Part shown: positions 1,231 through 64,000 of the stretch, in pieces
Layout of the letters: each line of letters starts with the position of its first letter
Position numbering within the stretch: the stretch's first letter is position 1
Origin: Macrostomum lignano
Lineage: Eukaryota
Direction: 5' to 3'
Assembly: GCA_002269645.1 (NCBI GenBank)
Contig: NIVC01000945.1
Span: 124,001-188,000, forward strand
Length of the DNA: 64,000 nt
The notes under the pieces: model-generated
The model's database searches: none
Told to the model about the DNA's origin: nothing
What the model saw: the letters and a program-made list of their open reading frames with translations, nothing else
Program-made: the position numbers and the translations under genes

Positions 1231-1300
1231 TCCTACGTCTCATACATGTCATGCTATTCAGTCCAATATTCAACAATAAGCCTTCAAGCAAAGTTCTCAC

Positions 1301-2454
1301 CTAGACGTGCCCCAGTAGAATGCCCATCCCTGATTTATGCAGAAGGTAAACGCCCGCACAATTTCTTCCATTGGCGTGCCCGGATCCGGCCTACTAGCGA
1401 ACACGAGGTCCACGTAGGTCATGCGAAGCCGCCGCAACGAGTCCCGCAGGCCTTCGACTATGCGTTTCCTAGAAAGTCCGCCCTCGGAAGCCGCCGCTCC
1501 GCCCCATTGGTGAATTTTGGTGCTGATTACGTAGGACGAGCGACGCCAGGGCTTCTGCTGGAGGAGGCGGCCGAGCAGCTCTTCGGCTCCACCTGAGGCG
1601 TACACCTCAGCGGTGTCGAATAGATTGATGCCGCAGGCGTAGGCTAGGGTTAGTAGGTCGTCAGCTACGGAATCTGAAATTAAATGAAAAATGGCAGTCA
1701 GACAATCAGAATGAATGGAGAGAGAAATTAATGACAGGAAAGAGTGGATTCTGGGGTAGGAATTGAGAGCTAGGCGGGAGTGGAGTGATGTGTGTACTGG
1801 GGTAGGAATTGAGAGCCAGGCGGGAGTGGAGTGAGGTGGGTGCTGGGGTAGGAATTGAGAGCCAGGCGGGAGTGGAGTGAGGTGGGTGCTGGGGTAGGAA
1901 TTGAGAGCCAGGCGGGAGTGGAGTGAGGTGGGTGCTGGGGTAGGAATTGAGAGCCAGGCGGGAGTGGAGTGAGGTGAGTGCTGGGGTAGGAATCAAGAGT
2001 CAGGCGGGAGTGGAGTGAAGTGGGTGCTGGGGTAGGAAATATAGACACGGACAAGAAGGGAGTTAGGTGGGTGCCAGTACTTTACAGTTTTCATACCGGT
2101 ACAAGAGTACTAACCATCGATCTGGCCAGCAAAGGTGACCCAGGTGCCAAGACCGATGCGCGAAACTCGCAGTCCAGTCCTGCCCAAGTTGTTATAGTGC
2201 AGCTTAGTATCTAGTCGGTACAGTCCCTCTGGATTCTGCTGCTGGTGTTGCTGTTTTTGTTGATAATGCCACCTTTCTTCCGTTCTCCTTGGCGATGACG
2301 AATGAAAGTAGCTGGAAGTTGATGCCTGAGAGTAGGAGTCTTCTGCCCGGTGACGACGAATTCCGCCGCCGCTGGCGAGGGAGGCGGCAGACGCGGAGCC
2401 GGCGGGTGACGACAGGTGGGGTTCTGTAGCGCGCCGCTCCTTGATCAGCTCCAT
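1301..2454 (-). CDS. KCNAB: Voltage-gated K+ channel beta subunit (aldo-keto reductase family), 5' part; exons 2454-2115 and 1673-1301; downstream exons not found in window
   Basis: Splicing gives [27 protein letters not shown]|[25 protein letters not shown]...VISTKI...[44 protein letters not shown]...WAFYWGTSR, which are Kv-beta motifs. GT-AG sites at 2114/1674 (phase 1) and a donor at 1300. An in-frame acceptor at 2473 suggests a further upstream exon. Confidence 0.93.
1745..2070. repeat. ~44-nt minisatellite in KCNAB intron (ggggtaggaattgagagccaggcgggagtggagtgaggtgggtgct)
   Basis: About 6-7 tandem copies. Confidence 0.9.
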
Positions 2455-8712: not shown

Positions 8713-15946
<7,234 letters not shown>

Positions 15947-41929: not shown

Positions 41930-43275
41930 TCCCTGTGTCTCCATGACTCCCCTTGTCTCCCCCATGTCTCCCGTGTCTCCCCGTGTCTCCCCCCTGTCTC
42001 CCCCTGTCTCCCTCTGTTTCTCCCTGTCTCCCCCTGTCTCCCCCTGTTTCTCCCTGTCTCCCCCTGTCTCCCCCTATCTCTCCATGACTCCCCCTGTCTC
42101 CCCCTGTCTCCCCCTGTCTCCCCCTGTCTCCCCGTGTCTCCCCCGTGTCTCCCCCTGTCTCCCCCTATCTCTCCATGACTCCCCCTGTCTCCCCCCTGTC
42201 TCCCCCCTGTCTCCCCCCTGTCTCCCCGTGTCTCCCCCGTGTCTCCCCCTGTCTCGCCTTGTTTCTCCCTGTCTCTCCATGACTCCCCCTGTCTCCCCGT
42301 GTCTCCCCGTGTCTCCCCCTGTCCCCCCTGTTTCTCCCTGTCCCCCCTGTCTCTCCATGACTCCCCTGTCTCCCCCTGTCTTCCCCCTGTTTCTCCCTGT
42401 CTCCCCCTGTACCCCCCTGTCCCCCCTGTCTCTTCATGACTCCCCTTGTCTCTCCCTGTTTCTCCCTGTCTCCCCCTGTTTCTCCCTGTCTCCCCCTGTC
42501 TTCCCCCTGTTTCTCCCTGTCTCCCCCTGTCTCCCCCTGTCTCGCCCTGTTTCTCCCTGTCTCCCCCTGTCCCCCCTGTCCCCCCTGTCTCTTCATGACT
42601 CCCCTTGTCTCCCCCTGTTTCTCCCTGTTTCTCCCTGTCTCCCCCTGTCTTCCCCTTGTTTCTCCCTGTCTCCCCCTGTTTCTCCCTTGTCTCCCTCTGT
42701 CCCCCCTGTCTTCCCCCTGTTTCTCCCTGTCTCCCCCTGTCTCCTTCTGTTTCTTCCTGTCTCCCCCTGTCTCCTTCTGTTTCTCCCTGTCTCCCCCTGT
42801 CCCCCTGTTTCTCCCTGTCTCCCCCTGTCTTCCCCCTGTCTCGCCCTGTTTCTCTCTGTCTCCCCCTGTCTCCCCCTGTTTCTCCCTGTCCCCCTGTCTT
42901 CCCCCTGTCTCGCCCTGTTTCTCTCTGTCTCCCCCTGTCTCCCCCTGTTTCTCCCTGTCCCCCTGTCTCCCCCTGTTTCTCCCTGTCCCCCCTGTCTTCC
43001 CCCTGTTTCTTCCTGTCTCCCCCTGTCTCCTTCTGTTTCTCCCTGTCTCCCCCTGTCTCCTTCTGTTTCTCCCTGTCTCCCCCTGTCTCCTTCTGTTTCT
43101 CCCTGTCTCCCCCTGTCTCCTTCTGTTTCTCCCTGTCTCCCCCTGTCCCCCCCCCCTGTTTCTCCCTGTCTCCCCCTGTCTTCCCCCTGTTTCTTCCTGT
43201 CTCCCCCTGTCTCCTTCTGTTTCTCCCTGTCTCCCTCTGTCTTCCCCCTGTTTCTCCCTGTCCCTCCCTGTCTCC
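41930..43275. repeat. Degenerate ~10-nt pyrimidine-rich array (ctccccctgt)n
   Basis: Read directly. Confidence 0.93.
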
Positions 43276-47111: not shown

Positions 47112-50100
47112 TCATATCCGGTTGGTGGTATTTCCGACTGAAAAGGAACAATGTACGAGAGTTATTTATCATATAAGTGACTGACTAGTGCCTCAATAGC
47201 GATTTGATTTGCTCAAAAGTTTAGAAAACTCACCGTCCAGACTTTGTGTAGAATAAATCAGGCGGAATCCTCTCGAAGTAACGCTTGAGTCAGTTTTGAA
47301 TCGAACCAGCACAGGACCTTGCAGGCTTAGTGAAACTCCGGTGGCATTGTTGTTAACCAGACTCGTTGTCAGCTTGCTATCGTCTACCTCATCAGAGATG
47401 CTGAATCTGTCGTATATGAAGATTTTGTCACAGCAGTTCTCAATGTCCACTTCTTCCATCCGGATGTTGACGGGGCCCGTCGTGTCGATCAGCCATTGGT
47501 AGTCTTTGCTATTAGCGTACATCGACGATCCATAGTTGCTTGGACACTTGATCGTGCCCAAGTCCTCCGAAACTGAAAGAAATGCGGTCAATTTGCACCC
47601 GATTTACATTCTAAAGCCATTGTGTACATCGTAAAGTTGCGACTACTAATAACGAAACTGATCAAATTAAATTCTACACTATTAATTACCTTATACACCT
47701 ACGACTACCCTTTTACTCTTAAAGTAGCTTACACTTCTACTCAGAGACGAGGACTACTAGACGAAATGTTCCTAGTGGTCTTTGCTCAGACAAAAGTACT
47801 CTCGTGTTACTCTCGCACTCAATTAGCAAGTTTGAGTAAAACGATCACACACAAACGCACACACATACCTACCGAAAAACCATTTTTAGTATAGGTGGAT
47901 TTAGTATATTTAGATTAGAGCTGCAGTCGAATGAAATCAAGCGAAGTACATATTTAATCCTCTCAGTGGTGAATGCAATCGTAAAAAATTCAACACCTCA
48001 AGCTCACCTACAACCGGTCCGCGTCTGTAAGAGAACGCAATGCCCCGACCATCAAAGCGTCTGCCAGTTTTAACTCTAATCAGCAGGGGTCCCGTCAGGA
48101 CAAAGTCCGCTGACGTGGCATTCGCGTCAGTTAGAATGAACAGCAAGTTTTGCTCATCGGCATCGGCGCTTTCTTGATCAGAAATTGCAAATACTTCAAT
48201 AAAGCTTCCATCTGCTCCGAGATTCGACCGGTTGAAAGCCAGCTTGTAAACATATTTGCCCGGAATCAGCCACTTATACTCCATCCACTTCTCCATTGTA
48301 CTGTTGGTATCGTTTGGGCACTGAATCATTGCAAAACTTTGGGACTGATTGGCGATAACTGAAACTGTTTGAAAGTAGCGGGGGATCAGAGATGATTGGA
48401 AAAAGTCAGAGGAAGTGTAAAAAGTGCAATTACCAGTCCTAGGCTCGATGGAATAGGACAAGTCGAAGCCCTGACCGACTAGCCGTTTATCCGTGCTAAA
48501 CCGGATCAGCACGGGACCAATCAACTTATACGTTGCCGATGTCGCGTTCGCCTGCGTCAGTGTGAACCTCAGCTTGCTCTCTTCTGGCTCATCGGTTTCT
48601 CCATCAGTCATCTCGTACAACTGGATGATGTCATTTCCGTAGCCAATGTCAGCAGATGTGACAGTGATGAGGACGAAATTCCTTCTGTTGATGGTCCATC
48701 TGTACTCCATCTCGTTAGCGTAAGTCGAGCCAGTCTCTTCGGGACAACTAAAGCTACCAGAGTCATTGGTCATGGCAACGTGCACTGAAAATGTGAATAA
48801 ATTTTAAGCACCACATTGCCCACATTGTGCAAAGTAGGAACTTAGTGCCAATCAGCAGATTAATATTATCGCAATACAATGTGCAACTAAATAATTCTCA
48901 CCACTTCTGATCTGATAATCGAAAACAACTTGACCGCTCGCCGAAGCAGAGTTGTTGGACGAATATACAACTGCAAGGATGCCTTTGTGCGTCACGTGAT
49001 TCGCAAATGGGATCCGTCTCGCGCTTCTCAGCATCGCTGGGCTGCTTAGCAGATCCATGTCGCCAGCGAATATCTCTACAGAAGATGAAGTCGTGATACG
49101 GTTAAAGATGACGTGCGTCAGGAAATCATGAGAACCAGTTGGTGCAACAATCCACTTTGTGCTCGAAGGTCTCGGGAGGACGGTAGATCCTTCCGCCGGA
49201 TTGCAGAGTCTCATGCCTCTGCTGCCCCTGATCACCTCGGTTGCTGGTGAAGCCTCTGAAAGATTCAGTTGTGTTTCAGTGCTCATGATTTGGTGGTCTT
49301 TGGAATCAAATGACTGAGACGGAGGTTCTGGCCAGATTTTTCTTGGCGATGCAGTCACAATAATGGTAAGCTCATAATCCTGGGGGGGCGTAGCCCAGCG
49401 GTCCAGCGCAGGCTCTAGTGTGCCAGCGACCCAGGCTCGATTCCAAGTGCAGTCACATTAATTTGGGGCTGAATTGGAATCTCGGCTTGGCTCTGCTCGT
49501 GCAATTAACGCCCTTGAGAGCCAACCCCCCAAGGCGCAGTGAAGTGTACATGCCTAACGATAAAATAAGTTAGGGCCGCTGTACACTCATGTTTGAATGT
49601 GTGCCTGCGTACGTATCCGCGCGCTTGTATGCCTGCTCAGGGGAGTCGGCGGAATGGGCAGTAATGCCTCTCGCCGGTTGTGTGCCTATGTCGCTTAAAG
49701 TGCTCCAGGGTGCTCACAACCCCCCTGCCTCTAATAAAAAAATAATATAAAGCTCATAATCCTTGAATGAGGGCGTACTTGGATGTAAGAAATGGCTAAG
49801 GTGTTAACTTAAAAAGGTGATCTCTGAGTAGGAAGTTTTCTGAATCTTCAGCAAAACAAGGAATTACCTTCAGCCGAACCATCAGCTGTGTAAGTGAGCT
49901 TGAAGTCCCTGCGGCTGCCGTCGCTGTTGGCTGTGAACCGAAGCAGCACGGGACCGGACAGTCGGAACTCTGACTGGCTGGCACTCGAATCGGAAACCAC
50001 AAATTTCAGATTGTCCTCCGTCTCAGACCTCGTGTTTTGGTACAGGTACACTTTGTCCCCAGCAGGAAGATTGATGGAGCTGAACCTGATGCGAACCGTG

Positions 50101-53100
50101 CCGCTTCTGTCGATGATCCATCGATGGTCCAGGTTGCCAACAGTTGCTTCACTTTGCGAGGAGTAACTGATTTCTCCTTCGGCATCACTCAGAGAAACTG
50201 AAATTTGTGGCAGGCGTTTAGGAGGTCAAATCTAGAGGTCAAAGCGGCCTGCTTTGAACTATAAGATGCAATAAGAGGAAAGGGTGGAACTACTTAGATG
50301 ACAAAGACGCAGCAGACTTCGGACTCAACTCACCATTCCCAACGGAGTAGGTGAACCTCAAGCCGAGTTTGTCTCCGCTGGCTCCAGTTCTCAACACCAC
50401 GGTGACGAATCCGCTCGCTCTCAGGGTCTTCCTCTCGCCAAGTAGGCCAGTCTGACTGAATATGGGAGACTCGCTGAGCCTGGGCTCAACTCCCGTGTAC
50501 ACATTGACTGTATCGTCATGGGGCTGGCCTCCCTCGGCATCAAAGAGCTGCAACTCAACCGTCTGTTGAGGGTTCACAGCGATGGACCAGGCTCTCGATG
50601 AGCCCAATGGTCCTCTGGACGGATAAATTGCTTTGCTTCCCTCAATGTTTTTGATGAGTTCAGTCGGCATCGGTAGTTCTGGGATAATGCGAGGGTAAAT
50701 ATGAGTCCAGCTATTATCCGGCCATTAGCAAACAGTGAAAGGCAAGAGTGCTGGCGATACTACACCTTTTCACGTTCAATTTTGATCAAAGTCCAGTTCT
50801 AAAAAAACTAGCGGAAATTCAATTCAGACTGAGGATAATTTTGTCTATGGCTAAACCTTACTTCGGTTAGAATGTTTTGAACTGGGGTTAGACTGGGCCC
50901 AACTGGACTTTGATCAAAATTGAACGTGAAAAGGTGTAAGAATGTGTTCGCTGGTTAAGTTTGTTACACTGAACTCGGCAATTAATCATCGTTTCCTATC
51001 GAAGACACTATATATACCTTTTTACGTTCTATTTGATAAAAACTGCAACCAATTTGGCCACGGCTCAGCCTGACGCAGCCGCAGCAATTTTCCATAGACA
51101 GCCACCGCCAGCGGCAACCAATTTGGTAAAAACTGCGAGCTATTTTGCCAGCTTGAAGATAGCAGCTCAATAGCATAACAATAACGATAAAGAATGTTAA
51201 CAATACATGCACGAAGTCAGAACATTATGTCCTCAGCATTCAAGCACCGATTGAAGTACGTCTGGGAATGGTTGATCCAGCGCAGGCACTTGAGAGGCGT
51301 GATGCAGTTCAGTGCTTGCTGCACTTCTCTCTTCAGAATGCGCATCCTGTGCTGATGCAGTGTCGCACCTGCTGCAGCAGCCAGTCCAGTATCTGCCAAC
51401 TCTACCAGTTCGTTCATACGTGGTCACGATGTTCCTCACTGTCGGTTTCTTCATCCCCATCATTCTGCCAAGCTCTCTCCAGTCGTCGCCACTCCTGTAC
51501 GCTCTCACGATTCGCTCTCGATCCAGCTGACTTATCTTTTGGTACGGCCCACGATTCGCCATCAGAGCAGCTGCTATCTTCAAGCTGGAAAAATAGCTCG
51601 CAGTTTTTACCAAATTGGTTGCCGCTAGCGGTGGCTGTCCATGGAAAACTCTATGTCTATGGTCAGGCTGAGCCGTGGCCAAATTGGTTGCAGTTTTTAT
51701 CAAATAGAACGTAAAAAGGTATATTATTACCCGCTGTCGTATAATCTGTGGTGACTGCCCGCCTAGTTTCGTCTATCCGCCCTACATGCTATTGCTGAAC
51801 ATAAACACGGTCCGAACTGTCGTTGTCATTTCCGCGGTTGATAAATCCCATAAACTGGAGTGAATTAGTTTAGAAATAATTTTTCATTGATTTGACCAAT
51901 AATGGAGCCACTGAGTCACCAACGGCAGTGCGAACCGCATTGAAAATTGAAGTACAGTAGAAAGACGCTAAATCGATTTTCCCAGAAATGAGCTGAAGGT
52001 AAGGAACATATAGTACGAGTATAATTGTCGCATCGCTAGTGCTTTTGCTCTCGAGAAGTCGGATTTTTCTAGCGCGAAGTTTTTTCGACCGAATTATTCT
52101 ATAGCGAAGCCCCCTTCAGAGCCGTCTAGCTTCCGAATTCTAGCGATTAGGAAAATATTCGATCTTTACAAGCGTGCACCTCATTTCTAAAAAAATCGAG
52201 TGTGCCGTTCAAGCTTCAGTTGTCCATGGCAAACCGACTTAAGCATATCAAGCGTCTGTACACATTGAATGCTCTGTAATGAAGGCGTGTTAATACTTAT
52301 TAAACGTGTTTGAGCAGTTGAACAATCATGTATCTGGGACTCAAAAGCTTATTTATAATATTTCCTTTAAATGATGAATAGATGGAAAATGATCATATTT
52401 TACCTTCGCTCCCGCTCTGATACGACAGCTTGAAGATGTTTCCACTGACCCGCTTTGTGGTGACTCGAACCAGCACGGGACCTCTGAGCCTGAACTCTAC
52501 AGAGGTCGCATTCGTCATTGACCTGTGCTCAGAGACGAAGGCCAGCCTGTCCTCGCTGGGGTCAGCAGTCATCTCGTACAGTCTGACAATATCTGCGTGA
52601 GACAGCTTCAGCGAGACCCAGCCTTGACGATCAATGAGCCACCTGTAGTCAGTCTCGAGGTCATACTTCATCTCTTCTTCCGCAGGAAGCTGCCCGCCTT
52701 CAGAGCAGACAACATCAGCTTTTTCGTCTGTCAGGTTTCTCGATTTTACTAAAACGGTTTCATTCAGAGCGTACTGAGGAATAATACGAATATTAAAGAT
52801 GCAAATTAGTAGTTTGACGGAAACAGTAACATCACTTTCTGTTTGTTCTGTTTAGCTTTGTTTTGTCACTCTCTGTAAATGTTTATTGACTAAATATTTA
52901 ATTAACAACAACTTACTTCTGTTCTCAAGAGCCGAGTAAGATAAGTTGAAGCCCGCCCCGGTGATACTGTTGTCAGTAACGAATTGGATCAGCACCGGAC
53001 CAACGACATGAGCTGTTTTGTTATCACTTGTCACGGTAAACCCTTTCTTAGAATCCTGAGCATCTTCAAAAAGCTGAGTCTTCTCATAGAAACTGATTTT

Positions 53101-56100
53101 ATCGATTCCCGTTTCAACGTCATACGAGTCAACCTTAATCTCGAGCAGGCTCAGATCGCCGATCCACCAGGCGTACGTTTTGCTGTTTAAATAGTAACCG
53201 CTGCCGAAATTTTCTGGGCATTGAAGCTTTCCTGAGTCCACTGAAAAGGCATCGAAAATTGAATAGACGTCTGATGGTTTGCATTGGCTCAAATTCAGAC
53301 CCACCTTGCGTGCTAAAATTTAACTTAGATAACAATAATTAACAATACCAATTACTATAAACAGTAATGAGAGTATCTGGAACTCAGGAATTCGAAACTC
53401 ACCCACGTATCGATCGAGATAATAATCGATTATAAAGCCTCTTGACGAGTTCTGACGATCAGTTTTAAATCGGATCAACGCAGGTCCAATCAAAACATAC
53501 TTTCTTGAGCTCCAGCTGTCTCCAGTCAGTGTGTATTTTCTGTTCTCAGGCTGCTGTTCCGCCGAAGAGTCAGTCTTTTCATAGAATTCAACCACATCGT
53601 TTGCGTCCTGAATGCCCATGCTTCTAACTGTCAAAAAGACAACTCTGCTCGATGGGATGTACCAACGATAGTCCATCTGATGCTCGTAGGCTTCATACTC
53701 TTCATTCGGACACCTGATGCTGCCCGAATCGTTCAGCAGATTACGGGAAACTAAAAATTTAAAAGAAGTGGCTTGGTGGAGAAACACTCACGTGCATAAA
53801 AACCGAGCGTCGGAATACGCAGAGCTGCTAAATTTTACACCATGAACTCAAAATTTAAACCAAGTAAATGCATAAAACACCAAAATGGCTCACAAGTTCG
53901 TTCCTCAACAGTATAAGACAAATTGAAGCCTTGGCCAACAAGAGACTCATCCGTGCTAAACCGGATCAGCACGGGACCAATCAACTTATACGTTGCCGAT
54001 GTCGCATTCGCCTGCGTCAGTGTGAACCTCAGCTTGCTCTCTTCTGGCTCATCGGTTTCTCCATCAGTCATCTCGTACAACTGGATGATGTCATTTCCGT
54101 AGCCAATGTCAGCAGATGTGACAGTGATGAGGACGAAATTCCTTCTGTTGATGGTCCATCTGTACTCCATCTCGTTAGCGTAAGTCGAGCTGGATTCCTC
54201 TGGACAGCGAAGGCTTCCAGAGTCCTCGCTAAGGTAGCGATGCACTGAAAGGAAGTAAGGCTTATGGTCTCACCATGGTCTCACTGTGCACTGAAAAGGG
54301 CAAGAGCTCACCGTTTCTGATTTGATAATCGAATTGAAAGACCAAATCAGTACAGCGGGAAGCAATATGAGACTCTTGTATCTGTTCCCAGTAAACGGAA
54401 ACAGGTCCACTTTGACTGACGTGCTGTGTCAGTCCTTTGAACTGAGCCTCAAAGCTATCATTGGAGAGTCTCTGAGTAAGCCAATTTCCAGCATAAACGA
54501 ACCAACCGCAGGTATACGAACCGGGAAAAAATTCAAAAAATCCTTCTACTTTGAAAAGAATATGAACGGTGAATTCATGACTCGGCTTTGGCGCAATGAC
54601 CCAAACAATTTTTGCTCTTTCACTCCTGTCGGTGGTATCAAATTTAGGGAAGCTCCATCTGGTACCTCGACTGCTCTTCACTACTTCAACCGCATTTTCC
54701 ACTGCAAGGTTTGATTGGGATAAAAATGGTTCACGATTACGTACATGTAGTTTTAGTTTTAATATGCACGCGACTTCTCTAAAGGCTTACACTTCAAATC
54801 GGGATCTGACTGATATGCCAGCCGGAAGCTTCTCGGGCTGCCGTCTCCCGCTGCCGTGATGCGAATCAAAACAGATCCTCTCAGCCAGAACTCCGACTCG
54901 CTGGCACTCGCATCTGCTAGCACAAATCTTCTCTTGAGCTCATCCTTGGACGTGGTGTTTTCGTACAGATGAAGCTTGTCTCCGTTCTGGAGATTGAGGG
55001 AACGAACATTGATGCGAACAGAACCGCTGCTTTGAATGATCCAGCTGTAATCCATGTCCAAGTCGAAAGCTGAACTATCCGCCGACGAGTTTTGAGGGAA
55101 CCTGATTTCTCCGGATCGTCCCGACAGTAAAACTTTAAGTGCAAAGAAGAATAGATCTTGCAGACTAAAGTAGTATGACTATATTTTTACATTAGTTATT
55201 GTTAAAAAATGAAAACAAAGTATGTGTAATTACCGTTTTCCACTGAATACTTGAGGCCGAACCCTCGCTTTGCTTCATTGGCGTCGTCGGTTCTCAGCAC
55301 TACGGTGACGAATCCGCTCGCTCTCAGGGTCTTCCTCTCGCCAAGTAGGCCAGTCTGACTGAAAATGGGAGACTCGCTGAGCCTGGGCTCAACTCCCGTG
55401 TACACACTGACTGTATCGCCATGCGGCTGGCCTCCTTCGGCATCAAAGAGCTGCAGCTCCACAGTCTGTTGAGGGCTCACAGCGATGGACCAGGCTCTTG
55501 CGGAACTCGGTCCGCAGCTGCTTCGACCATCGGGCATGAGGCAGCCCTGCAGTCCGTTCAAGTTTCGCAAAAGCGCAGTCGTCATCGATAAATCTGCGGG
55601 GAAGTTATTTAGAAAAGTCACTGTTCCTATCTAGAGATACAAATTGATTGTCGCTTTCAGACTGCCTCACTTTGTCGGTTGACACTGAACGTCGCCCCGA
55701 ACGGCACTATCGCCGGTCTCATCCTTCGCGATTGAAGCCGAACAACTGCTGGGCCTCTTAGTTTGAACTCGGTAGACATCAAATCGCTGAGCGGTGCATC
55801 AGTCAGGGAGAACACGCGACTCCTTGGAGTTGGGATCTTTGTCCTCTCGTGCAGCTCTAGCTTGTCGCAACCGCTTAGCAATTGAGCCTGCACGAATCGA
55901 ATGCTGACCGCCGCTGTTGTGTCGACAACCCACCTGCGGTCAATCTGCATGTCGTAGCCATCGGTATCGCAGACATCCAGCCCAATGGCATTCCTCAAGT
56001 TGCTTGACTGCGCTCCAATTTCACCTTGAGTCTGTGTCCGAACACTGGATATTACTAAAATATTATAGAAACCGTGCATTATTTTCAGACAATAGAAAAT

Positions 56101-59100
56101 ACCAAAGACGCGAAGATGGGATCAAAAACATCAAAGTGACATCAGCATACCGAATTGGTCTCCTATTTCATAGGAAAAGTTTAGAGCTCTTTGCATTGGT
56201 CGACCAGCTGTAACTAACTTGATCATACCAGGTCCGATCAGTCTGTATGTAGATGAAGTAGCATTCCCCTTCGTCAGTGTAATGTTTGCAGTTGACGAGT
56301 CCTTTCTCCATAACTGGATTTTGTCGCAGCAGTCTGAGATTTCCACCCCACTGAATTTGACTGCCACAGCTGCCTTTCGGTCGATTTTCCAAATGTAGTT
56401 TACCTGGGCTTTGGTGAATGATGGCGGGTTCACCCACCGAACTTCACCCGAGTCGCCTGACAGACCTGAAAGTTCGAATTCAAATTTTAACTCGTCTTAT
56501 GAAGCAGCTTTCATGAATATAAAAAGAATGAACTACTGTTTGCCGTGAATACATAAATTTTTAATTTTTTAAACGAGCCAGGTAAGACAATGCAGAAATC
56601 TATCATGAACTCCTAAATTCTAATTAAAATCAAATTATAATCAAACTTTGATAGAAAATTACTATACTAATTATTTCTTACTTGAGGTTTCTTCTAGATA
56701 GTATGTCATGCGAAACCCGTCACGATTGGTACTGCCGTCAGTTTTGAACCTGATGAGCACTGGTCCCTTCAAGGTGTATGTTTCACCGTATCCGTTCCCT
56801 GTAAGCTTGTACTTTAGTTTATTTTCGTCAGGCTTCTCATGCACCGGTGAGTTTTCGTACAAGCCGATCCAATCATAACTACTCTCAGTATCATAGCGAA
56901 TGAACGTAAGCACCACCGTTTTCTGCTCATAGATGCTCCACTCGTAGTCAACGTTGTTATCGTACTTAGAGTATCCATAGTTCTCCGGATATGAAAGGTT
57001 TCCACTGTCCACTGGAAAGATTTAAGGAAAATATAATAACGAGTAAAAAGCGGTTGTTTAGTATGTGCAGACAAAATATTCCCAGAAAGACTGAAAGCTT
57101 CTAGGCAATTATGTGCTAACAAATTTCACGGAAACATTGCGAATTGGATGCTTACAGATTTTTCTGCCAGCCTGATAGTAGAGCTGAAAGCCGGGAGCAG
57201 TAACTTGAGAGTTCGTTCTGAACCGGATGAGCACTGGTCCAACCAGCGTAATATTCGACGCTTCTGCAGCCTCCTGAGTCACATTGAGCTTCCATCTCTG
57301 CCGATCTGGCTCTCCACTCTCATCGACCTTCTCATAGAACTCGATGGTGTCTTGAATGTCAATAAAGTCGAACCGAATGACGATGATGCTTTTTCGATTG
57401 ATTGTCCATCGGTAGTCCATGGACTTCTCATAGTTCACCAGTGCGGTCTCGGGGCAGAAAATATTGCCGGAGTCATAATTCAACATTCGGTGTACTGCAA
57501 AACGTAAATGAGAGTATTTCTACACAGTAAGTTTTATGCTAGCTATTATTATCTCTCAGTTATTATCTCTTGGAATTCTTGAAATCCACTAGTTTTCTAC
57601 GAGCCAAAATTCCAGTTCACAACCATGCAACTGGCTGTGCAGTGTTTATACTTTCTTCGAAAATACATGCATGCGAAACCGTAAGTTTTATCTTCAAACA
57701 ACATGGTCGGATTTCGATAGGATACGAATCGACAATTCGATAAGACCCTAAAGTCACAACTTAATGAAATGAACTTGCTGAGATAAGAATCGGCAATTTG
57801 ATAAGACCTCAAAGTCACAACTCAATGAAATGAACTTGCTGAGATAAGAATCGGCAATTTGATAAGACCTCAAAGTCACAACTCAATGAAATGAACTTGC
57901 TGAGATAAGAATCGGCAATTCGATAAGACCCTAAAGTCACAACTCAATGAAATGAACATGCTGAGATAAGAATCGGCAATTCGATAAGACCCTAAAGTCA
58001 CAACTCAATGAAATGAACATGCTGAGATAAGAATCGGCAATTCGATAAGACCCTAAAGTCACAACTCAATGAAATGAACATGCTGAGATAAGAATCGACA
58101 ATTCGATATGACCCTAAAGTCACAACTCAATGAAATGAACATGCTGAGATAAGAATCGACAATTCGATATGACCCTAAAGATACAACTCAATGAAATGAA
58201 TATTCTGACTTACAAGTCCGCTCTTCAGTAGTGTAGGACAGATTGAATCCCTGACCAACAAAATCTTTGCCCGTGACGAACCGGACCATGACTGGACCCG
58301 GCAGTCGGTAGGCCCCCCGTGCTGTAGCATTCGACTGAGTCAGAGCGAACTTCAGCTTGGCCTGCTGTGGCTCGTCGGTCAAGTAGGTCTCCTCGTACAG
58401 CTCGATGACGCCACTCCCAATGTCCACGGTTGTGACCTCGATAACAACTAAGTTAAGCCGGTTGACTGTCCATCTATACTCCATTTCGCTCTCGTAGGTC
58501 TCACCAGACACCTGAGGACATCGAATTGACCCCGAGTCTTTTATGAGAGGCTCTTGAGCTGAAAAAAAGAGAGAAAAACAACGATGCTCTTAGCTGCTTG
58601 CCAGTGAAATAAAATTCGACTAAAATCTGAACGCATTTTGAGTATTTCATTAAAGAACATTGCAAATAACTTATAGAAGACAATGACTGCATTAATACAT
58701 AAAAATGCTAACATTCATTACCGTTTGCTAACTGAAACTTGAACTCTTGCTGAAATCTAATGAAGCTCGAAGCCCTTGGTCGATAAACCACAGTCAGAGG
58801 ACCGTTGTACCTGACGATGCTCGCATACGGGATCCGCTGGAGTGGCTCAGAACTCGACAAGCTGGTGACGGCTCCCTCATAGAGACTTATTGCGATTCCT
58901 GACACCACTGGTAGCTCTGGCAGGTTCAACAGAACTGAGCGCCTGGGCTTGGCTGCAATGACCCATGCAGTAGGCGACCCGTTCTCGGGGATAAGAACTC
59001 TCGAGCCTCGATAGCCGTCAATCAGCTCAACAGCCATGTCAGTATCTGCAGTGTCACACAAGCAGTTGCGTCAATCGCAAATCTATGCTTGTCACCAAAG

Positions 59101-61818
59101 AGACAGCGGAGAAAAATTTTTAGGAAATTATCACTCACTGCCCGACTGGTCAGCTGCGTACGACAGCCGAAAGCCTCTCGACTGACCGTCTCCGCTGGCA
59201 ACTAATCGAATCATGACGGGACCGGACAGACGGAACTCCGACTCTCTGGAGCTAGCATTGGTCACCAGGAATCTCAGAGCCGCTTCGTCCTCAGACGTTG
59301 TGTTCTCGTAGATGTACAGCTTGCCATTGGGACGGAGGCTTATGGAGGTGAATCGGATGCTGAGTCTGATGTCTCTGCTAATGAACCAGCGGTAATCCAT
59401 GTCGCTGTTGAACTCCGCTGAGCCCTTGGGGAACTCTATTCGCCCACTCGGTTCCGCTTGAGAAGCTTAATGAAGGTGTGGAAATACTGATTACTGATTG
59501 AGTTTTAGTCACCAACAAAGTTGTTGAAATTAGCGTTGTCATTGTATTGACTGTGTATATTTTGATTCACTTTTACCTGACTTTTGTGACTCATGAATTT
59601 GGCTATTATGCCCTAAATCGCACTTTATGCTAAGCTTTTCGCTGCACTTCGATTATCATAGTTCAAAACGATTCTTACTGCTGTACACAGTGTAGGAGAG
59701 ACCGAGCCCACGTCGTGATCGTCTGGCTTCTGTCGTCAGCATCACAGTGACGAATCCGTTCGCTCTCACGGTCTTCCTCTCACCAAGTAGTCCAGTCTGA
59801 CTGAATATCGGAGACTCGCTCAGCACAGGACGAACACCATTATACACGCTTATCGTATCCATATGTGGCTGACTTCCCTCGGCATCAAATAGCTCGAGCT
59901 CAACGATTTGCTGGGGATTCACGGCAATAAACCATGCTCTTGTTGTGACATTGCTCACAGCGATGTCAGCACCTTTACTTTGGTAACAGATTCTCTCTCC
60001 TTTTTCATTTTTGATTATTTCAGTAGGCATTTCCAGATCTGAAGCGACAATGGAATTATCATTGTAATAGTCTAAGAACGGAGTCACCCTAAACTTTAGT
60101 GAGTCACTTTAAGTCTAGAATTACCTCCGTCGCTGCTTCTGTAGGACAGCCTAAAAACTCGTCCCCTTGTCTGTGTCTTCGTAACCTGCACCAGCACCGG
60201 GCCGAGCAGTCGGAAACGCGACGTCCCTTCTCTCTCTTTCGGTCCGTCGATAAAGACGGGCTCCTTGTCGGGGGTTGTCGTCATCTGGTAGATCCGAGCG
60301 AGGTCAGAGAAGGACAGCTTGAGGTCGATTCTCCCGGGTCGGTCAATGAGCCACCGGTATTCAATGCTAACATTGCTGGTGTCTTGATCCGAGACTTCCA
60401 GCTCTGAGCAGATTGCGTCGTCTCTGGGCTCGGTGAAAGTTCTGAATCGAACTAAAATTGCGAAAATTGGGTAGCTTTTCAACTATCAGCTCATTGCTTT
60501 GATATTACTTAAACTATTTACCACTTATACTAATACGTATACTTATCCTACTTATCCAAGCTTATTATTCAGTATAGGAAGCCTTCATTAAATACCTGAC
60601 AGTAGCCAGACACAGTAGCCTGACAACAACGTTACTCACCCAAAGATTCCTCAAGCGTGTAGGTTAGGTTGAATCCCCTCTTTGTGACGCTACTATCTGT
60701 CTTAAATCGAATTAGCACAGGAGCAATGAGCACAAGCACTTCGGATGTAGCGTTATTCGGATTGATTCGGAATTTTGGATTCCTGCGATACGATACTTCG
60801 AGGTCGTCCGTACTCTCGAAAATCTCCAAGCGGTCATATGGGGTCTCCAGTTCCGCAAAGTGGAATCGGATGGCTACAACCTTCGGCCCGCGAATGGTCC
60901 AGTTGTATTCTTTGGAGTTCTCATAGAGGGCGCCGGGCTGCCCAAAGTTTTCCGGACATTGAATTGTGCCAGTGTCGGCCGGGACTGAAACTGTGGATCA
61001 GGGACCACATCAGTACTTGGATGAACATAGCTGACAGAACTGCTTTAATTGCAAAACAGTCTAGAACAGTCAGTCAACACTTCAACTGCTAAAAATTTAC
61101 TGCTGGCCCTAACCTATTATTGAAGTAAATCACCGGCAGAGAAAAGTCAGGAACCAAATTCTGACTGTTCTTGATGATGGCAACACAATACATATATTTC
61201 CCATGATAGCTTCTGATTATAGATTTCTTAACATTGTCTAAAACGTTTTAACATTCATTTCGATGCAGGCTCGTGTTTGAATGTAACCAATATTACGTGC
61301 ATTCAAATCATCATTGTTGTCTGGACTTTAGGGCCCGGACTGATTATACTGAATATCACCGCTTTTTCGCGGCAGACACAATAACTTGCTGTCTTGAACG
61401 TAGACAAATCTGTAGTACATCTACTTGTACTACAGATAGCTGATGTTGAATAAAAGTGTCAAATACAGTCATCAATGATCTTAAAAATGACTGTGCAAAG
61501 TTCATCCGAACTCTTGACTGAAAATCGTGGAACAAATGAAGAGCTAAAAAAATCGAGGGCAATAGAACATCCACAATCACATTGCGGTCAGTCAGTCAGT
61601 CGCAAATCTGACTTGATCGGAGGCTGCAGTTCTCAGTCCATAAGCATTAGGATGTTGAAATATTGGCGTCAGCAATCAGACTCACCTGCTACAGCAGAGC
61701 CGGTTTCAAATGCCAAGAGGCTGCCTAGAAAGGCGGTGAGTAGCAGTAGCAGCAAATCCATTTGCTGGTTGCTGCAAAAGAATTTCTTAGGGCTCCGGTG
61801 CTGCAGCTTGACCAGCAT
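47112..61818 (-). CDS. Secreted multi-CUB-domain protein, 25 exons, ~2,700 aa, 23 CUB-like domains
   Basis: Signal-peptide exon 61818/61761-61686 (MDLLLLLLTAFLGSLLAFETGSAVA). Domain exons: 60984-60640, 60451-60125, 60071-59679, 59465-59139, 59045-58722, 58558-58214, 57494-57156, 57011-56682, 56465-56151, 56054-55671, 55593-55234, 55132-54791, 54701-54312, 54244-53894, 53750-53403, 53240-52917, 52748-52404, 50678-50334, 50197-49868, 49297-48902, 48784-48434, 48364-48008, 47572-47234. Terminal exon 47137-47112. CUB hallmarks (SGxIxCP, YxWxI, D.I..YE, GPVLIRFKTDxSVTxRGF.L.Y) are strong in some exons and divergent in others. A few acceptors have in-frame alternatives. Confidence 0.85.
47748..47784. 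mobile_element. 37-bp degenerate TIR-only insert
   Basis: cgaggactactag...ctagtggtctttg flanked by ctcagaga / ctcagaca (7/8 TSD match). Confidence 0.62.
49382..49749 (+). mobile_element. Full-length tRNA-derived SINE (family A) in CUB gene intron
   Basis: Head gggggcgtagcccagcgg (A box) and ggctcgattcc (B box), A-rich tail, and a 14-bp TSD aagctcataatcct at 49368-49381 and 49750-49763. Confidence 0.9.
50763..50936. mobile_element. 174-bp Tc1/mariner-type MITE
   Basis: Perfect 36-bp TIRs caccttttcacgttcaattttgatcaaagtccagtt with TA on both sides. Confidence 0.9.
51015..51721 (-). mobile_element. Internally deleted Tc1/IS630-superfamily transposon
   Basis: ~150-bp imperfect TIRs starting tacctttttacgttc with TA flanks. 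Remnant N-terminal HTH (MANRGPYQKISQLDRERIVRAYRSGDDWRELGRMMGMKKPTVRNIVTTY, ATG at 51562) is joined out of frame to a C-terminal remnant ending at 51217. No DDE core. Confidence 0.8.
57718..58200. repeat. 61-nt minisatellite in CUB gene intron 7
   Basis: About 8 copies containing aaagtcacaactcaatgaaatgaac...gagataagaatcggcaatt, starting next to the donor. Confidence 0.93.
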
Positions 61819-64000
61819 AATATTTATAAACTTTTAAAGCCCAGGGACCTAGTGAAGCTCCGGAAATTTCCATAGCCATGTTTACGCGTGTTTTCAGCTT
61901 TTTGTGAGCCCTGGATATACCTCGGTTTGTACTCGTAGGGGTAGGTCATCTCGGTGCGATCTTAATGATAAAATATGCCAAAATCTCGCGTGTCAGATGC
62001 AAATTCTCTTAAGCTGCGGCGATGAAAAGCTTTGATTAGACTGCATCGCGACTTTTGTGTTGGCTAAGTAACTTTGTATTGCACTCGGTGACCCTTTGAT
62101 TGTAGAGCCATGGTTTGAACCCTCATATAAACGAACAAGCATCGATAGTGAAAATGGCAAATATGGAATAACACTATCATTTATAGGCAGTTTATACACT
62201 ATTACTCACTTTGGTTAGCTCGTATTTAAGGTGTTGTGAGCTGAATGGAGCCCTCTAGAGGCTTCTAGCACTAGGTTGAACAACTCCAATTTTGAGATGG
62301 ACTGATCAAAATTATAAATTGCTTGTTCGACAAATATTGAGTTTTCTTCAATATCTACGTGACAGACTCGCTCTGGTAGTTATGATTTGTAACTGGTACT
62401 GCTGCTATCTTGAAATATTTGCAGTAGGGTTGTGGCCTCCCTGGTGCAATGTCTGTTGCGAAATAGTCTCAGAACCAGCACTGAGACAATTCTGCCCAAT
62501 TCACTGACTCCTGAGCACATAAAGGCACGCCAATACGCAAGCACGCACTCATACGCACGTTCACACAGGGTGTACAGCGGCCCGAGTTCCTAATCGTAGG
62601 TGTAAACCAAACGGCAACTCCCCCCGACCAATGCATATGCACCAAATAATTAAATCGAACCACCTTGCACCTAGGGGTGTTCGGGATATGGCTTTTGGAG
62701 TAACCTCGTTCCCAAACATTTTTCAGTAACCCCGAACCCCGTCCCGAACCCCGGAAACTCCGACGTGTACACGAACCTACCCATCTTAGTCAGGGGGCAA
62801 GGCACCAAGCGTAATAATAATCTCTGCGTGCATATCTGTTATTTAATGATGTGCCACACGACATAGCAAATTTACCTTTTAAGTTTAGCTTACTTGCAAA
62901 CAGCATATGAGTATGAGCTTCAGCCTCCTTAAGTAACCTTTCTCTATTCAGTTTGGTTCTGTGATCAGTTCCTGATTTCAATTTTTCTTTAATTCCTCTG
63001 GATCTAAAAGGTTAGCATCAATGTTCTGGCCTACAAAAGCCAGGGAAGACAAGAATACTGGCGACTACTCTCGACAATTGGTTTGCTTCCGTTCAATACA
63101 TAATTTATGTCAAATTCAATTAAGCACATCAAGACAGGTGTGAGTCAGAGACAGGTGTGGATACGGAGTTTAAAATACATAATTCTATGGGAATTCAGAC
63201 AATTCGCGAATTCCCGAAAATCACGCTCCAGAATTCCGTCTTGAACCCGATCCCGAAAAAGTCGACTGCCTGCATGGCTGATGCCGGCGCCCTGGACACT
63301 GCCGGCCGGCGGTGCGGCCTACGTTCGCACCCAGGCCCTGAAACGCGTCCTGTGACGTTGTCTCCGCTTGACTGGCTGACAACTTATTTTGTTTTTATTT
63401 TTGTCGTGAGCAATAGTTTCGTTCATTAGTAAAAAAGACAAGATGAATTCCGAAATCTGTACTTACATGTAAAACTGGTCTGAGAAAAAGCATAACCATT
63501 CCAGATAGCTATGTTTAGACCTCCATGAATGAACAACGCTGATGGCCTGATTAAATCCAAGTTCGAAAGGGTTAACTAATTATTAACCCTAACAAATTGC
63601 ATTAAAATGGCCAGTGATTTATCAGTTTAAGCGGGGCAGCGCCCGAGCCCTAATCTAGAGTGGCCATCTGTCTTTCAGGTGAGGTTTGCGATTTTTTACC
63701 TTTGGCGTGCCGAAAATTGTTAAACATTTGTCAACCGGAAACACAGCCCTTGTCTACCATCAAAGGGAGCGTTTGAAACTGCGATCAAGTAAACAAAATA
63801 GCACTCGATTGGCAGAGCTCCACTACTTTTATCAGATGATAAAGGCATCTGTAAATATTTAAGGCAAACAATTTCAACGGAAGCTTGTTCTGGAAAGAAA
63901 AAGTAAGAGAGGTGGGGAGAGGTGAAGATGAGGTTAAAAGATTAGGCGCATTTTTTAAGCTTGGCTTCTGTTTACGAAGCAATATATTATTATACTTCAT

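What the first reader, a model, noticed from the sequence alone, without database searches (positions are those of the whole stretch)
47112..61818. ~2,700-aa secreted 23-CUB protein built from a triplicated 7-exon cassette
Seen: the domain exons fall into recurring sequence types in the order A | B C D E F G A | A' | B C D E F G A | B C D E F G A. Type C (MPTE..RAWxIAVNPQQxVEL..SESPIFSQTGLLGERKT) recurs at 59679, 55234 and 50334, and type F at 58214, 53894 and 48434. There is a signal peptide but no EGF, protease, TM or GPI segment. Mainly the A-type domains keep the E..D..FxTDxS pattern typical of Ca2+-binding CUBs. Established: cubilin has 27 CUBs plus EGFs and acts as a multiligand receptor. 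Inference: a lineage-specific CUB-only scaffold with about one Ca/ligand-binding module per heptad, possibly a mucus, matrix, adhesion or pattern-recognition protein.
Basis: partly seen in the sequence, partly recalled or inferred. Interest (0 to 1): 0.78.

Follow-up and report, generated by a model that had tools for sequence, protein, structure and literature searches.

The report
Flatworm secreted protein of 23 CUB modules
This is a real, intact gene of the flatworm Macrostomum lignano that encodes a secreted chain of 23 very divergent CUB-fold modules built by tripling a seven-exon cassette; databases already list it as an uncharacterised "CUB domain-containing protein", so it is a tidy but fairly ordinary lineage-specific gene.

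Summary
On the minus strand, 47112-61761/61818 holds one 25-exon gene. All introns are GT..AG and phase 1.

The window is Macrostomum lignano, locus Mlig029297.g1. Paralogous loci carry transcript-style annotations of 2689 aa with the same exon structure and 95% identity. All 24 exons that could be matched are intact in a second copy (dN/dS 0.41; the 26-nt last exon gave no BLAST match).

- **Cassette:** types C, D, E and F form clades by cassette position (bootstrap 95-100%). A and B do so weakly. G does not.
- **CUB identity:** Pfam calls only A1, A2 and A4 as CUB. The A/F/G profile hits cubilin and PCPE-1 CUBs, and AlphaFold models of C and E match CUB structures.
- **Cysteines:** the canonical CUB cysteines are gone.
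- **Calcium site:** only the A modules keep the Tyr/Glu/Asp/Asp/Ser residues.
- **Other parts:** no EGF, protease, TM or GPI segment.
- **Relatives:** none beyond generic multi-CUB proteins (at most 97 bits).

The likely role is a secreted multivalent binding scaffold. Tissue and ligand are unknown. It is a new member of a known kind, of modest interest.

The parts
61686..61761 (-). Exon 1: start codon ATG 61761-61759 and signal peptide MDLLLLLLTAFLGSLLAFETGSAVA.
   Evidence: Sequence read; donor G|GTGAGT in phase 1; it is the only stretch with Kyte-Doolittle-19 above 1.6; conserved in the paralogues.
61823..61828 (-). TATAAA box about 28 nt upstream of where the database transcripts and proteins begin.
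   Evidence: conserved in L001; the database proteins begin at H (61800), P or K. That this is the promoter is an inference.
60640..60990 (-). Exon A1: CUB module with the full Tyr/Glu/Asp/Asp/Ser site.
   Evidence: Pfam CUB 30.4 bits; gene model; site table.
60125..60451 (-). Exon B1.
   Evidence: best match is B3 at 81 bits.
59679..60038 (-). Exon C1.
   Evidence: 59-62% identical to C2 and C3.
59139..59465 (-). Exon D1. The acceptor is 59465, as used in the annotated paralogues.
58722..59045 (-). Exon E1.
58214..58558 (-). Exon F1.
57156..57494 (-). Exon G1.
   Evidence: Pfam CUB 17 bits, below threshold.
56682..57011 (-). Exon A2: CUB module with the full acidic site.
   Evidence: Pfam CUB 28.9 bits.
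56151..56465 (-). Exon A': an extra, divergent module outside the cassettes.
55671..56054 (-). Exon B2.
55234..55593 (-). Exon C2. Its core shares a block of about 210 nt at 87-100% identity with C3.
   Evidence: AlphaFold model pLDDT 81.5 with CUB fold.
54791..55132 (-). Exon D2.
54312..54701 (-). Exon E2.
53894..54244 (-). Exon F2. It shares a block of about 210 nt at about 100% identity with F3.
53403..53750 (-). Exon G2.
   Evidence: Pfam CUB 21.3 bits against a cutoff of 21.4.
52917..53240 (-). Exon A3: full acidic site.
   Evidence: Pfam CUB 15.1 bits.
52404..52748 (-). Exon B3.
   Evidence: the same boundary is used in PAA92424.1.
50334..50678 (-). Exon C3.
49868..50197 (-). Exon D3.
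48902..49255 (-). Exon E3.
   Evidence: AlphaFold model pLDDT 73.2 with CUB fold.
48434..48784 (-). Exon F3.
48008..48364 (-). Exon G3. It is separated from F3 by a 69-nt intron that happens to be in frame and free of stops.
   Evidence: the same splice is used in the paralogues.
47234..47572 (-). Exon A4: full acidic site.
   Evidence: Pfam CUB 28.7 bits.
47112..47137 (-). Terminal exon (..VGNTTNRI) with stop TGA at 47114-47112.
   Evidence: the same C-terminus is found in UniProt A0A1I8GGR3.
50700..51742 (.). Insertion of about 1 kb in intron B3/C3, specific to this copy: a Tc1/mariner-like remnant. It is not part of the coding sequence.
   Evidence: Absent from L001; 157-nt inverted repeats; HTH_SB match.

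Best explanation
The region is one intact Macrostomum lignano gene, locus Mlig029297.g1. It is one of several ~95%-identical copies in this polyploid genome.

**What it encodes.** A signal peptide followed by 23 tandem modules of about 110 aa, each with a CUB fold and each on its own phase 1-1 exon. There is no other kind of domain.

**How it arose.** An old triplication of a seven-exon cassette (B-C-D-E-F-G-A) was added to a leading A and an extra A'. Later gene conversion homogenised blocks of about 200 nt in exons C and F between cassettes 2 and 3.

**How it most likely works (inferred).**
- The protein is exported and N-glycosylated.
- It acts outside the cell as an elongated, multivalent binding scaffold.
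- The four A modules, one per cassette, keep the Tyr/Glu/Asp/Asp/Ser residues that canonical CUBs use to hold a calcium ion and clamp a basic side chain of a ligand. This would give regularly spaced binding sites.
- The other, cysteine-free modules would serve as spacers or as calcium-independent surfaces.
- The C module is the most conserved type apart from the gene-converted F2/F3 pair, which makes it the best candidate for a second functional surface.

**Status of each step.** Shown: gene structure, CUB relationship, conservation, lineage restriction. Inferred: secretion, calcium binding, scaffold role. Unknown: tissue and ligand.

**Confidence.** The single figure given is a blend: about 0.95 for the gene and its architecture, and about 0.4 for the binding-scaffold mechanism.
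For: - **Gene model.** 25 exons, all GT..AG and all phase 1, with no internal stops.
- **Agreement with public models.** Full-length GenBank and UniProt models of paralogous loci match at 95.3-95.6% identity. Against the two GenBank models only one acceptor differs.
- **Conservation.** In a second genomic copy (L001) the 24 exons that could be matched keep ag/gt, have no stops and have only 3n indels. dS is 0.052 and dN/dS is 0.41.
- **Cassette.**
- **Gene-conversion tracts.**
- **CUB relationship.**
  - Pfam CUB for A1, A2 and A4, and 131 bits for the whole protein.
  - The A/F/G profile hits cubilin 3kq4 at E 1.7e-7 and PCPE-1.
  - B and D match A/F/G by BLAST, down to E 1e-16.
  - C to E by hhalign at 95% probability; C to A/F/G at E 6e-5.
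  - The only PDB hit of the C profile is the CUB2 of PCPE-1.
  - The AlphaFold models of C2 and E3 give mainly CUB domains in Foldseek, at TM 0.6-0.7.
- **Secretion.** An N-terminal hydrophobic signal and no other hydrophobic segment; 39 N-glycosylation sequons, 9 of them at one aligned loop position.
- **Acidic site.** Complete only in A1-A4.
Against: - There are no expression, localisation or biochemical data. Seven look-ups in papers and their supplements found nothing on these gene identifiers or on CUB proteins of this animal.
- In the A modules the Glu-to-Asp distance is 4 residues shorter than in canonical calcium-binding CUBs, so the site may not form.
- All canonical CUB disulfides are lost. 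There are 23 Cys in 2676 aa and none at the four canonical positions except C3 in A4, A' and B2. This is unusual for an extracellular CUB protein.
- The alignments used for the AlphaFold models contained the A/F/G modules, which could bias C and E toward a CUB fold.
- E shows no significant profile match to A/F/G directly.
- A dN/dS of 0.41 is only moderate constraint.
Confidence: 0.6

Rival explanations
1. The copy in this window is a decaying duplicate (pseudogene), and only the paralogous loci are functional.
For: - This locus carries a copy-specific transposon remnant of about 1 kb in intron B3/C3, and a further ~370 nt in intron D3/E3.
- Its public annotation is a truncated 1292-aa 'partial' protein.
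- M. lignano has redundant copies of the gene.
Against: - All 25 exons are open, and every splice site is GT..AG.
- The insertions are intronic.
- The truncated annotation is explained by a model that jumps out of frame from exon C2 into the nearly identical tract of exon C3.
- Divergence from L001 shows fewer non-synonymous than synonymous changes per site.
Confidence: 0.1
2. It is the flatworm counterpart of cubilin: a peripheral endocytic multiligand receptor.
For: - It has many tandem CUBs.
- The named outside hits are cubilin-like proteins.
- The A/F/G profile hits the cubilin CUB5-8 structure.
Against: - There are no EGF repeats and no N-terminal region before the CUBs.
- Identity to cubilin-like proteins is only 25-30%. 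Nearly all outside hits match best in query residues ~500-790 (the G1-A2 stretch, most often A2).
- The modules lack the canonical cysteines.
- The heptad of seven module types has no counterpart in the outside hits.
Confidence: 0.04
3. It is a fast-evolving reproductive secretion (prostate or seminal fluid, or female tract), by analogy with the spermadhesins, which are CUB proteins of mammalian seminal plasma.
For: - The top Foldseek hits for the E model are spermadhesins.
- dN/dS of 0.41, with several exons where pN is at least pS, fits relaxed or diversifying evolution.
- It has no detectable orthologue outside Macrostomum.
- Reproduction-related genes evolve rapidly in this genus (title and abstract of PMC7336406).
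Against: - The identifiers do not appear in the held supplements of the reproduction-gene paper.
- The main text of the seminal-fluid screen mentions neither CUB domains nor spermadhesins.
- Spermadhesins are single-CUB proteins.
- The per-exon substitution counts are too small for a test of selection.
Confidence: 0.12
4. The 23-exon model is only one of many products. Because every exon is phase 1-1, exon skipping yields a family of shorter in-frame isoforms, for example ones that lack the E modules.
For: - All domain exons are symmetric.
- UniProt models A0A1I8J6E8 and A0A1I8GGR3 lack exactly the 108-aa exon E1, among other pieces.
Against: - Most gaps in those two models cut through the middle of modules rather than removing whole exons. 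That looks like a prediction artefact.
- The two GenBank models contain all exons.
Confidence: 0.15

Closest known systems
Cubilin (8 EGF + 27 CUB; structure of CUB5-8, PDB 3kq4)
   Same: - A long tandem array of CUB modules with no transmembrane segment.
- The A modules keep the Glu/Asp/Asp residues of the calcium-site type seen in cubilin CUBs.
- It is the best PDB sequence hit of the A/F/G profile, at E 1.7e-7.
- Several outside hits in the phmmer search that were looked up are named cubilin-like.
   Different: - No EGF repeats and no N-terminal region.
- Only 25-30% identity.
- Canonical cysteines are lost.
- Seven distinct module types in a triplicated cassette.
- Most modules are invisible to the Pfam CUB model.
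CUB-only arrays of other invertebrates, for example Nucella lapillus KAL8573023.1 (2061 aa, 18 CUB)
   Same: - A protein made of tandem CUBs with no other kind of domain.
- It is the best-scoring non-Macrostomum protein, at 97 bits.
   Different: - Its CUBs are canonical: 1680 bits to Pfam CUB, against 131 bits for the whole Macrostomum protein.
- There is no evidence of the heptad cassette.
- 27% identity over the matched stretches.
Spermadhesins (PSP-I/PSP-II, aSFP; PDB 1spp, 1sfp)
   Same: Among the best structural matches of the C2 and E3 models, at TM 0.62-0.70. Both are secreted CUB proteins.
   Different: Spermadhesins are single-module proteins of about 110 aa with disulfides. Sequence identity here is only 13-15%.
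Procollagen C-proteinase enhancer 1 (CUB1-CUB2-NTR; PDB 6fzv, 6fzw)
   Same: Its CUB2 is hit by both the A/F/G profile (E 2e-5) and the C profile (E 0.02). It also matches the models in Foldseek.
   Different: It has two CUBs plus an NTR domain and a defined ligand (the procollagen C-propeptide). Nothing comparable is known here.

Membership tests
CUB domain (Pfam PF00431) | Score at or above the Pfam gathering threshold (21.4 bits). | tested here: inconclusive
   - Whole protein: 130.9 bits.
- Per module: A1 30.4, A2 28.9 and A4 28.7 pass.
- G2 21.3, G1 17, A3 15.1 and F2 14.4 fail.
- For B, C, D and E, the modules scanned gave no CUB hit. E1, F3 and one or two copies each of B, C and D were not scanned singly.
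CUB domain (Pfam PF00431) | Beta-sandwich fold of about 110 residues, superposable on solved CUB domains. | tested here: met
   - The C2 model (pLDDT 81.5) and the E3 model (pLDDT 73.2) have 9 strands.
- Their Foldseek top hits are mostly CUBs (neuropilin, spermadhesin, PCPE-1, TSG-6, C1r), at TM 0.6-0.7.
- Caveat: the alignment contained the A/F/G modules.
- A/F/G align end to end with cubilin and PCPE-1 CUBs.
CUB domain (Pfam PF00431) | Four conserved cysteines forming two disulfides (C1-C2, C3-C4). This is established knowledge (Bork and Beckmann 1993). | tested here: not met
   - The C2 position (CxW) is Tyr, Arg, Thr, His or Ile in all 23 modules.
- C3 is kept only in A4, A' and B2.
- There are 23 Cys in the whole protein, mostly one per module, at the 'S' position of the SPxYP motif.
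CUB domain (Pfam PF00431) | Conserved core Trp (CxW) and C-terminal GF.a.Y motif. | tested here: met
   Trp is invariant in 23 of 23 modules. The terminal Tyr is present in 21 of 23, with Phe in the other two.
Calcium-binding CUB subclass (as in C1r/C1s, MASPs, cubilin, PCPE; recalled from Gaboriaud et al. 2011) | Tyr, Glu, Asp and Asp (plus Ser/Asn) ligands at fixed positions. | tested here: inconclusive
   - All five residues are present in A1-A4 only.
- C2 has Glu/Asp/Asp without the Tyr.
- F2, F3 and G2 lack the Glu.
- The Glu-to-Asp loop is 4 residues shorter than in cubilin and PCPE-1.
- Actual calcium binding cannot be tested here.
Cubilin | N-terminal stretch plus 8 EGF repeats ahead of 27 CUBs. 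| tested here: not met
   No EGF or other domain is found by Pfam in the full protein. The signal peptide is followed directly by module A1.
Nematode CUB-like family (Pfam PF02408, CUB_2) | Match to the CUB_2 model. | tested here: not met
   There is no CUB_2 hit for any module or for the whole protein. Canonical multi-CUB proteins do hit this model.

The most novel reading that the evidence does not exclude
The disulfide-free modules, and above all the C/E pair, would be a Macrostomum-specific offshoot of the CUB fold. C and E have no detectable sequence relatives outside this gene. On this reading the strict seven-module period reflects a repeating supramolecular unit. The protein would then be the building block of a lineage-specific secreted material or recognition system of free-living flatworms, for example a secretory-granule, mucus or egg/sperm-interaction component whose molecules are so far unknown.
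Probability: 0.12. Interest if true: 0.5.

Novelty: new member of a known kind. Interest (0 to 1): 0.3.

Why it matters
It adds a clean, well-documented example of how exon-per-module extracellular proteins grow:
- a cassette of seven phase 1-1 exons was triplicated;
- it was then partly homogenised by gene conversion;
- the CUB fold survived complete loss of its disulfides.

In practical terms it corrects the truncated annotation at this locus (PAA74479.1). It also shows why near-identical conversion tracts break transcript-based gene models in this polyploid genome.

Macrostomum lignano is a laboratory model with in situ hybridisation, RNAi and transgenesis, so the gene's role can be tested directly. 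As it stands it is an uncharacterised, lineage-specific secreted protein and does not bear on a long-standing question.

Tried and rejected
1. **Spliced protein as query.** I used the first 1013 residues of UniProt A0A1I8J6E8 instead. That model lacks the E exons, so the E type was never searched against that library.
2. **First word-indexed search.** It returned a single protein. E-values in a 5.8-billion-sequence database hide ordinary CUB matches.
3. **The look-up of encoding contigs for A0A1I8J6E8.** Nothing on record. It worked for PAA92424.1.
4. **Expression or function look-ups.** None gave a hit:
   - full-text search for Mlig033186, Mlig029297 and Mlig028314;
   - supplements of PMC5816591, PMC7336406, PMC5730564, PMC12732829 and PMC12896417;
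   - PMC11398382 has no supplements held;
   - the adhesion proteins Mlig-ap1 and Mlig-ap2 have other domains and no CUB;
   - the seminal-fluid screen does not mention CUB.
5. **E versus A/F/G by hhalign.** Not significant. The E profile against PDB gave only chance hits. The CUB assignment of E therefore rests on its link to C and on the model.
6. **Polyprotein idea** (dibasic cleavage sites between modules). Rejected, because the linkers show no recurrent KR or RR sites.
7. **G as a seventh clade.** Rejected by the tree.
8. **More CUB exons outside 47-61 kb.** None found.
9. **FhaA_N Pfam hit** (30.7 bits, no stretch passing on its own). Treated as spurious.
Full report
**What is in the sequence.**
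Stop-to-stop ORFs on the minus strand between 47.2 and 61.0 kb form a regular series of 22 open segments of about 110-290 aa. Most end in a shared motif of the type GPVLIRF.TD....GF.L.Y. A search for frame-compatible donor and acceptor pairs gives one solution throughout:
- every intron is GT..AG and interrupts the codon after its first base (phase 1);
- every domain exon is a multiple of three.

Upstream, an exon at 61761-61686 encodes MDLLLLLLTAFLGSLLAFETGSAVA and ends in G|GTGAGT. Downstream of the last module, a phase-1 donor (ACG|GTGAGT) leads to a 26-nt exon that ends with TGA at 47112.

The spliced product has no internal stop. It is 2676 aa in my first model and 2679 aa once the D1 acceptor is moved to 59465, as in the annotated paralogues. 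A TATAAA lies at 61828-61823, and all database versions of the protein begin between 61800 and 61785. This makes 61761 the more likely start; that is an inference.

tblastn with one module of each type finds no further copies anywhere else in the window.

**The cassette.**
All-against-all BLAST of the 23 modules shows that B, C, D, E and F each have their positional counterparts as best matches. The four A modules are each other's best matches.

| Type | Same-type identity |
|---|---|
| C | 59-70% |
| F | 57-87% |
| D | 44-48% |
| A | 35-42% |
| B | 26-39% |
| G | 28-37% |
| E | 28-29% |

A neighbour-joining tree with 200 bootstraps gives the following support.

| Grouping | Bootstrap |
|---|---|
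| C | 100% |
| D | 99% |
| E | 95% |
| F | 100% |
| C+E together | 100% |
| A | 45% |
| B1+B3 | 95% (B2 lies apart) |
| G | 2% |

G1-G3 are equivalent by position only and sit as a grade next to F and A. A' is an outlier. So the order A|BCDEFGA|A'|BCDEFGA|BCDEFGA is real. Four of the seven types are robust clades, and colinearity carries the rest.

The introns of the three cassettes do not align with each other, so the triplication is old. Two exceptions are informative:
- F2 and F3 share a block of about 210 nt at essentially 100% nucleotide identity, with flanks at 52-70%;
- C2 and C3 share a block of about 210 nt at 87-100%, with flanks at 30-63%.

Such sharp-edged blocks are the signature of gene conversion rather than of uniform constraint.

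**Organism and public record.**
The first protein search returned a single protein, UniProt A0A1I8J6E8 of Macrostomum lignano. An exhaustive phmmer search of 1.84 billion representatives returned two proteins above 2400 bits, and then nothing above 97 bits.

Cluster look-up shows that the family consists of M. lignano entries only:
- GenBank PAA92424.1 and PAA83892.1 (Mlig033186.g2 and .g1, 2689 aa, 'hypothetical protein, partial');
- UniProt A0A1I8JLF6 (2681 aa, 'CUB domain-containing protein');
- several fragments.

PAA74479.1 (Mlig029297.g1, 1292 aa) is identical to the window's product over its first ~1265 residues, so the window is that locus. Its tail (WSQRRQTRLEVHLLRWECFSE) is exon C3 read one base out of frame. 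The model slipped from C2 into C3 across the conversion tract.

The full-length paralogue models are 95.3-95.6% identical to my model. The two GenBank models use the same exon boundaries except the D1 acceptor. The UniProt model also differs by 2-7 residues at three further junctions.

**Conservation.**
The genomic locus of PAA92424.1 (L001, NIVC01000052.1) is colinear with the window through exons and introns, at about 94-97% identity.
- All 24 exons that could be matched keep their ag/gt.
- None has a stop, and indels come only in multiples of three.
- Nei-Gojobori counts give dS 0.052, dN 0.021 and dN/dS 0.41.
- The 26-nt terminal exon gave no BLAST match in L001.

This is moderate purifying selection on the whole array. 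The window copy carries an extra ~1 kb in intron B3/C3, with 157-nt inverted repeats and a Sleeping-Beauty-type HTH remnant. That does not touch the coding sequence.

**Are the modules CUB domains?**
Pfam recognises the whole protein as CUB and nothing else. The score is 130.9 bits, and a 30.7-bit FhaA_N hit has no significant stretch. Module by module, only A1, A2 and A4 pass. G2, G1, A3 and F2 are sub-threshold, and the B, C, D and E modules that were scanned gave no CUB match.

Further evidence by type:
- **A/F/G/A'.** A profile of these modules hits cubilin CUB5-8 (3kq4, E 1.7e-7) and PCPE-1 (E 2e-5), end to end and in register.
- **B and D.** They match A/F/G by BLAST, for example D1-F1 at E 1e-16.
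- **C and E.** They match each other by hhalign at 94.8% probability (E 5e-8).
- **C alone.** It matches the A/F/G profile at E 6e-5 in the expected register. Its only PDB hit is the CUB2 of PCPE-1, at E 0.02.
- **E alone.** It shows nothing direct.

AlphaFold models were built on an alignment of all 23 modules. They give nine-strand sandwiches for C2 (pLDDT 81.5, pTM 0.79) and E3 (pLDDT 73.2, pTM 0.68). Foldseek against the PDB returns mainly CUB domains at TM 0.6-0.7: spermadhesins, neuropilins, PCPE-1, TSG-6, C1r, MASP and Neto2. Other small sandwiches score lower. The alignment contained CUB-like paralogues, so the models are not fully independent evidence.

My reading is that all seven types are CUB-fold modules, five of them too divergent for the Pfam model.

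**Unusual features.**
- **Cysteines.** The four canonical cysteines are gone. The CxW cysteine is Tyr, Arg, Thr, His or Ile in every module, and C3 survives only in A4, A' and B2. The protein has 23 Cys in all, mostly a single one at the 'S' position of the SPxYP motif.
- **Core residues.** The Trp is invariant, and the final Tyr nearly so.
- **Acidic site.** C2 has Glu/Asp/Asp. The Glu-to-Asp loop in the A modules is four residues shorter than in cubilin or PCPE-1, so calcium binding is plausible but unproven.
- **Topology.** Only the N-terminal signal is hydrophobic. The C-terminus (..STQSLDVGNTTNRI) is polar, so there is no TM and no GPI-type tail.
- **Glycosylation.** There are 39 N-glycosylation sequons, nine of them at one aligned loop.
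- **Linkers.** They are short and have no recurrent dibasic sites.

**Function.**
Nothing is published. The gene identifiers occur in no searchable full text or held supplement. The known adhesive proteins of this animal have other domains.

The best-supported reading is a secreted, glycosylated, elongated multivalent binding scaffold. It would carry one candidate calcium-dependent site per cassette (the A modules) and a strongly conserved C module as a second candidate surface.

The alternatives score as follows:
- decaying copy: 0.10;
- cubilin orthologue: 0.04;
- reproductive secretion: 0.12;
- isoform family by exon skipping: 0.15.

**Comparison and verdict.**
The nearest known things are cubilin and the CUB-only arrays of other invertebrates. 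One Nucella lapillus protein has 18 canonical CUBs and no other kind of domain. This gene differs in four ways: the extreme divergence of its modules, the loss of all disulfides, the seven-type cassette, and its restriction to Macrostomum.

It fails the membership test for cubilin, because it has no EGF repeats. It is a member of the CUB superfamily by profile and fold.

The gene is already in the databases at full length, under uninformative names. What is new is the description of the cassette, the conversion tracts and the corrected model for this locus. I rate it a new member of a known kind, with interest 0.3.

Noticed in passing
window 50700-51742 (intron B3/C3): An insertion of about 1 kb that is absent from the paralogous locus. 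It has 157-nt inverted repeats (51724-51569 and 51012-51167, 93% identity) and an ORF (51236-51772, minus strand) with a Sleeping-Beauty-type HTH. This is a Tc1/mariner-like remnant.
   Followed up: partly
window 57721-58208 (intron F1/G1): A tandem array of 8 copies of a 61-bp unit at 96% identity inside an intron of the gene.
   Followed up: no
window 53894-54244 vs 48434-48784, and 55234-55593 vs 50334-50678: Blocks of about 210 nt with sharp edges between exons F2/F3 (about 100% identical) and C2/C3 (87-100%), with flanks at 30-70%. These are gene-conversion tracts between cassettes 2 and 3.
   Followed up: yes
window 55234-55593 / 50334-50678 (public model PAA74479.1): The GenBank model of this very locus stops at 1292 aa because it runs from exon C2 into exon C3 one base out of frame, across the near-identical tract. 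This is an annotation artefact.
   Followed up: yes
window 61816-61828: A TATAAA at 61828-61823 is followed directly by an in-frame ATG (61818) that probably lies upstream of the transcription start. Both are conserved in the paralogous locus.
   Followed up: partly
window 49380-49747 (intron D3/E3): About 370 nt present here but not in the paralogous locus L001. Its nature was not examined.
   Followed up: no
window 1300-1992 (-), 10768-12442 (+), 25673-26278 (+): Exons of neighbouring genes: an aldo/keto-reductase-type protein (95.8 bits), a neutral/alkaline ceramidase (89.6 and 116.6 bits), and a major-facilitator transporter (30.1 bits, below threshold).
   Followed up: partly
window 29167-31578 (-): An 804-aa open frame made of Lys-rich repeats (GAKKxGKKVKK...) over a 66/219-bp tandem array, with no Pfam match. 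It is unclear whether this is coding sequence or just a minisatellite.
   Followed up: no
window 1-46000: More than 25 minisatellite arrays fill much of the upstream 46 kb and cause the strong GC-skew swings. Examples are 41 bp x 64 at 34117-36791, 15 bp x 94 at 39780-41206, 10 bp x 134 at 41931-43275, and GTA-type repeats at 9686-10402.
   Followed up: no
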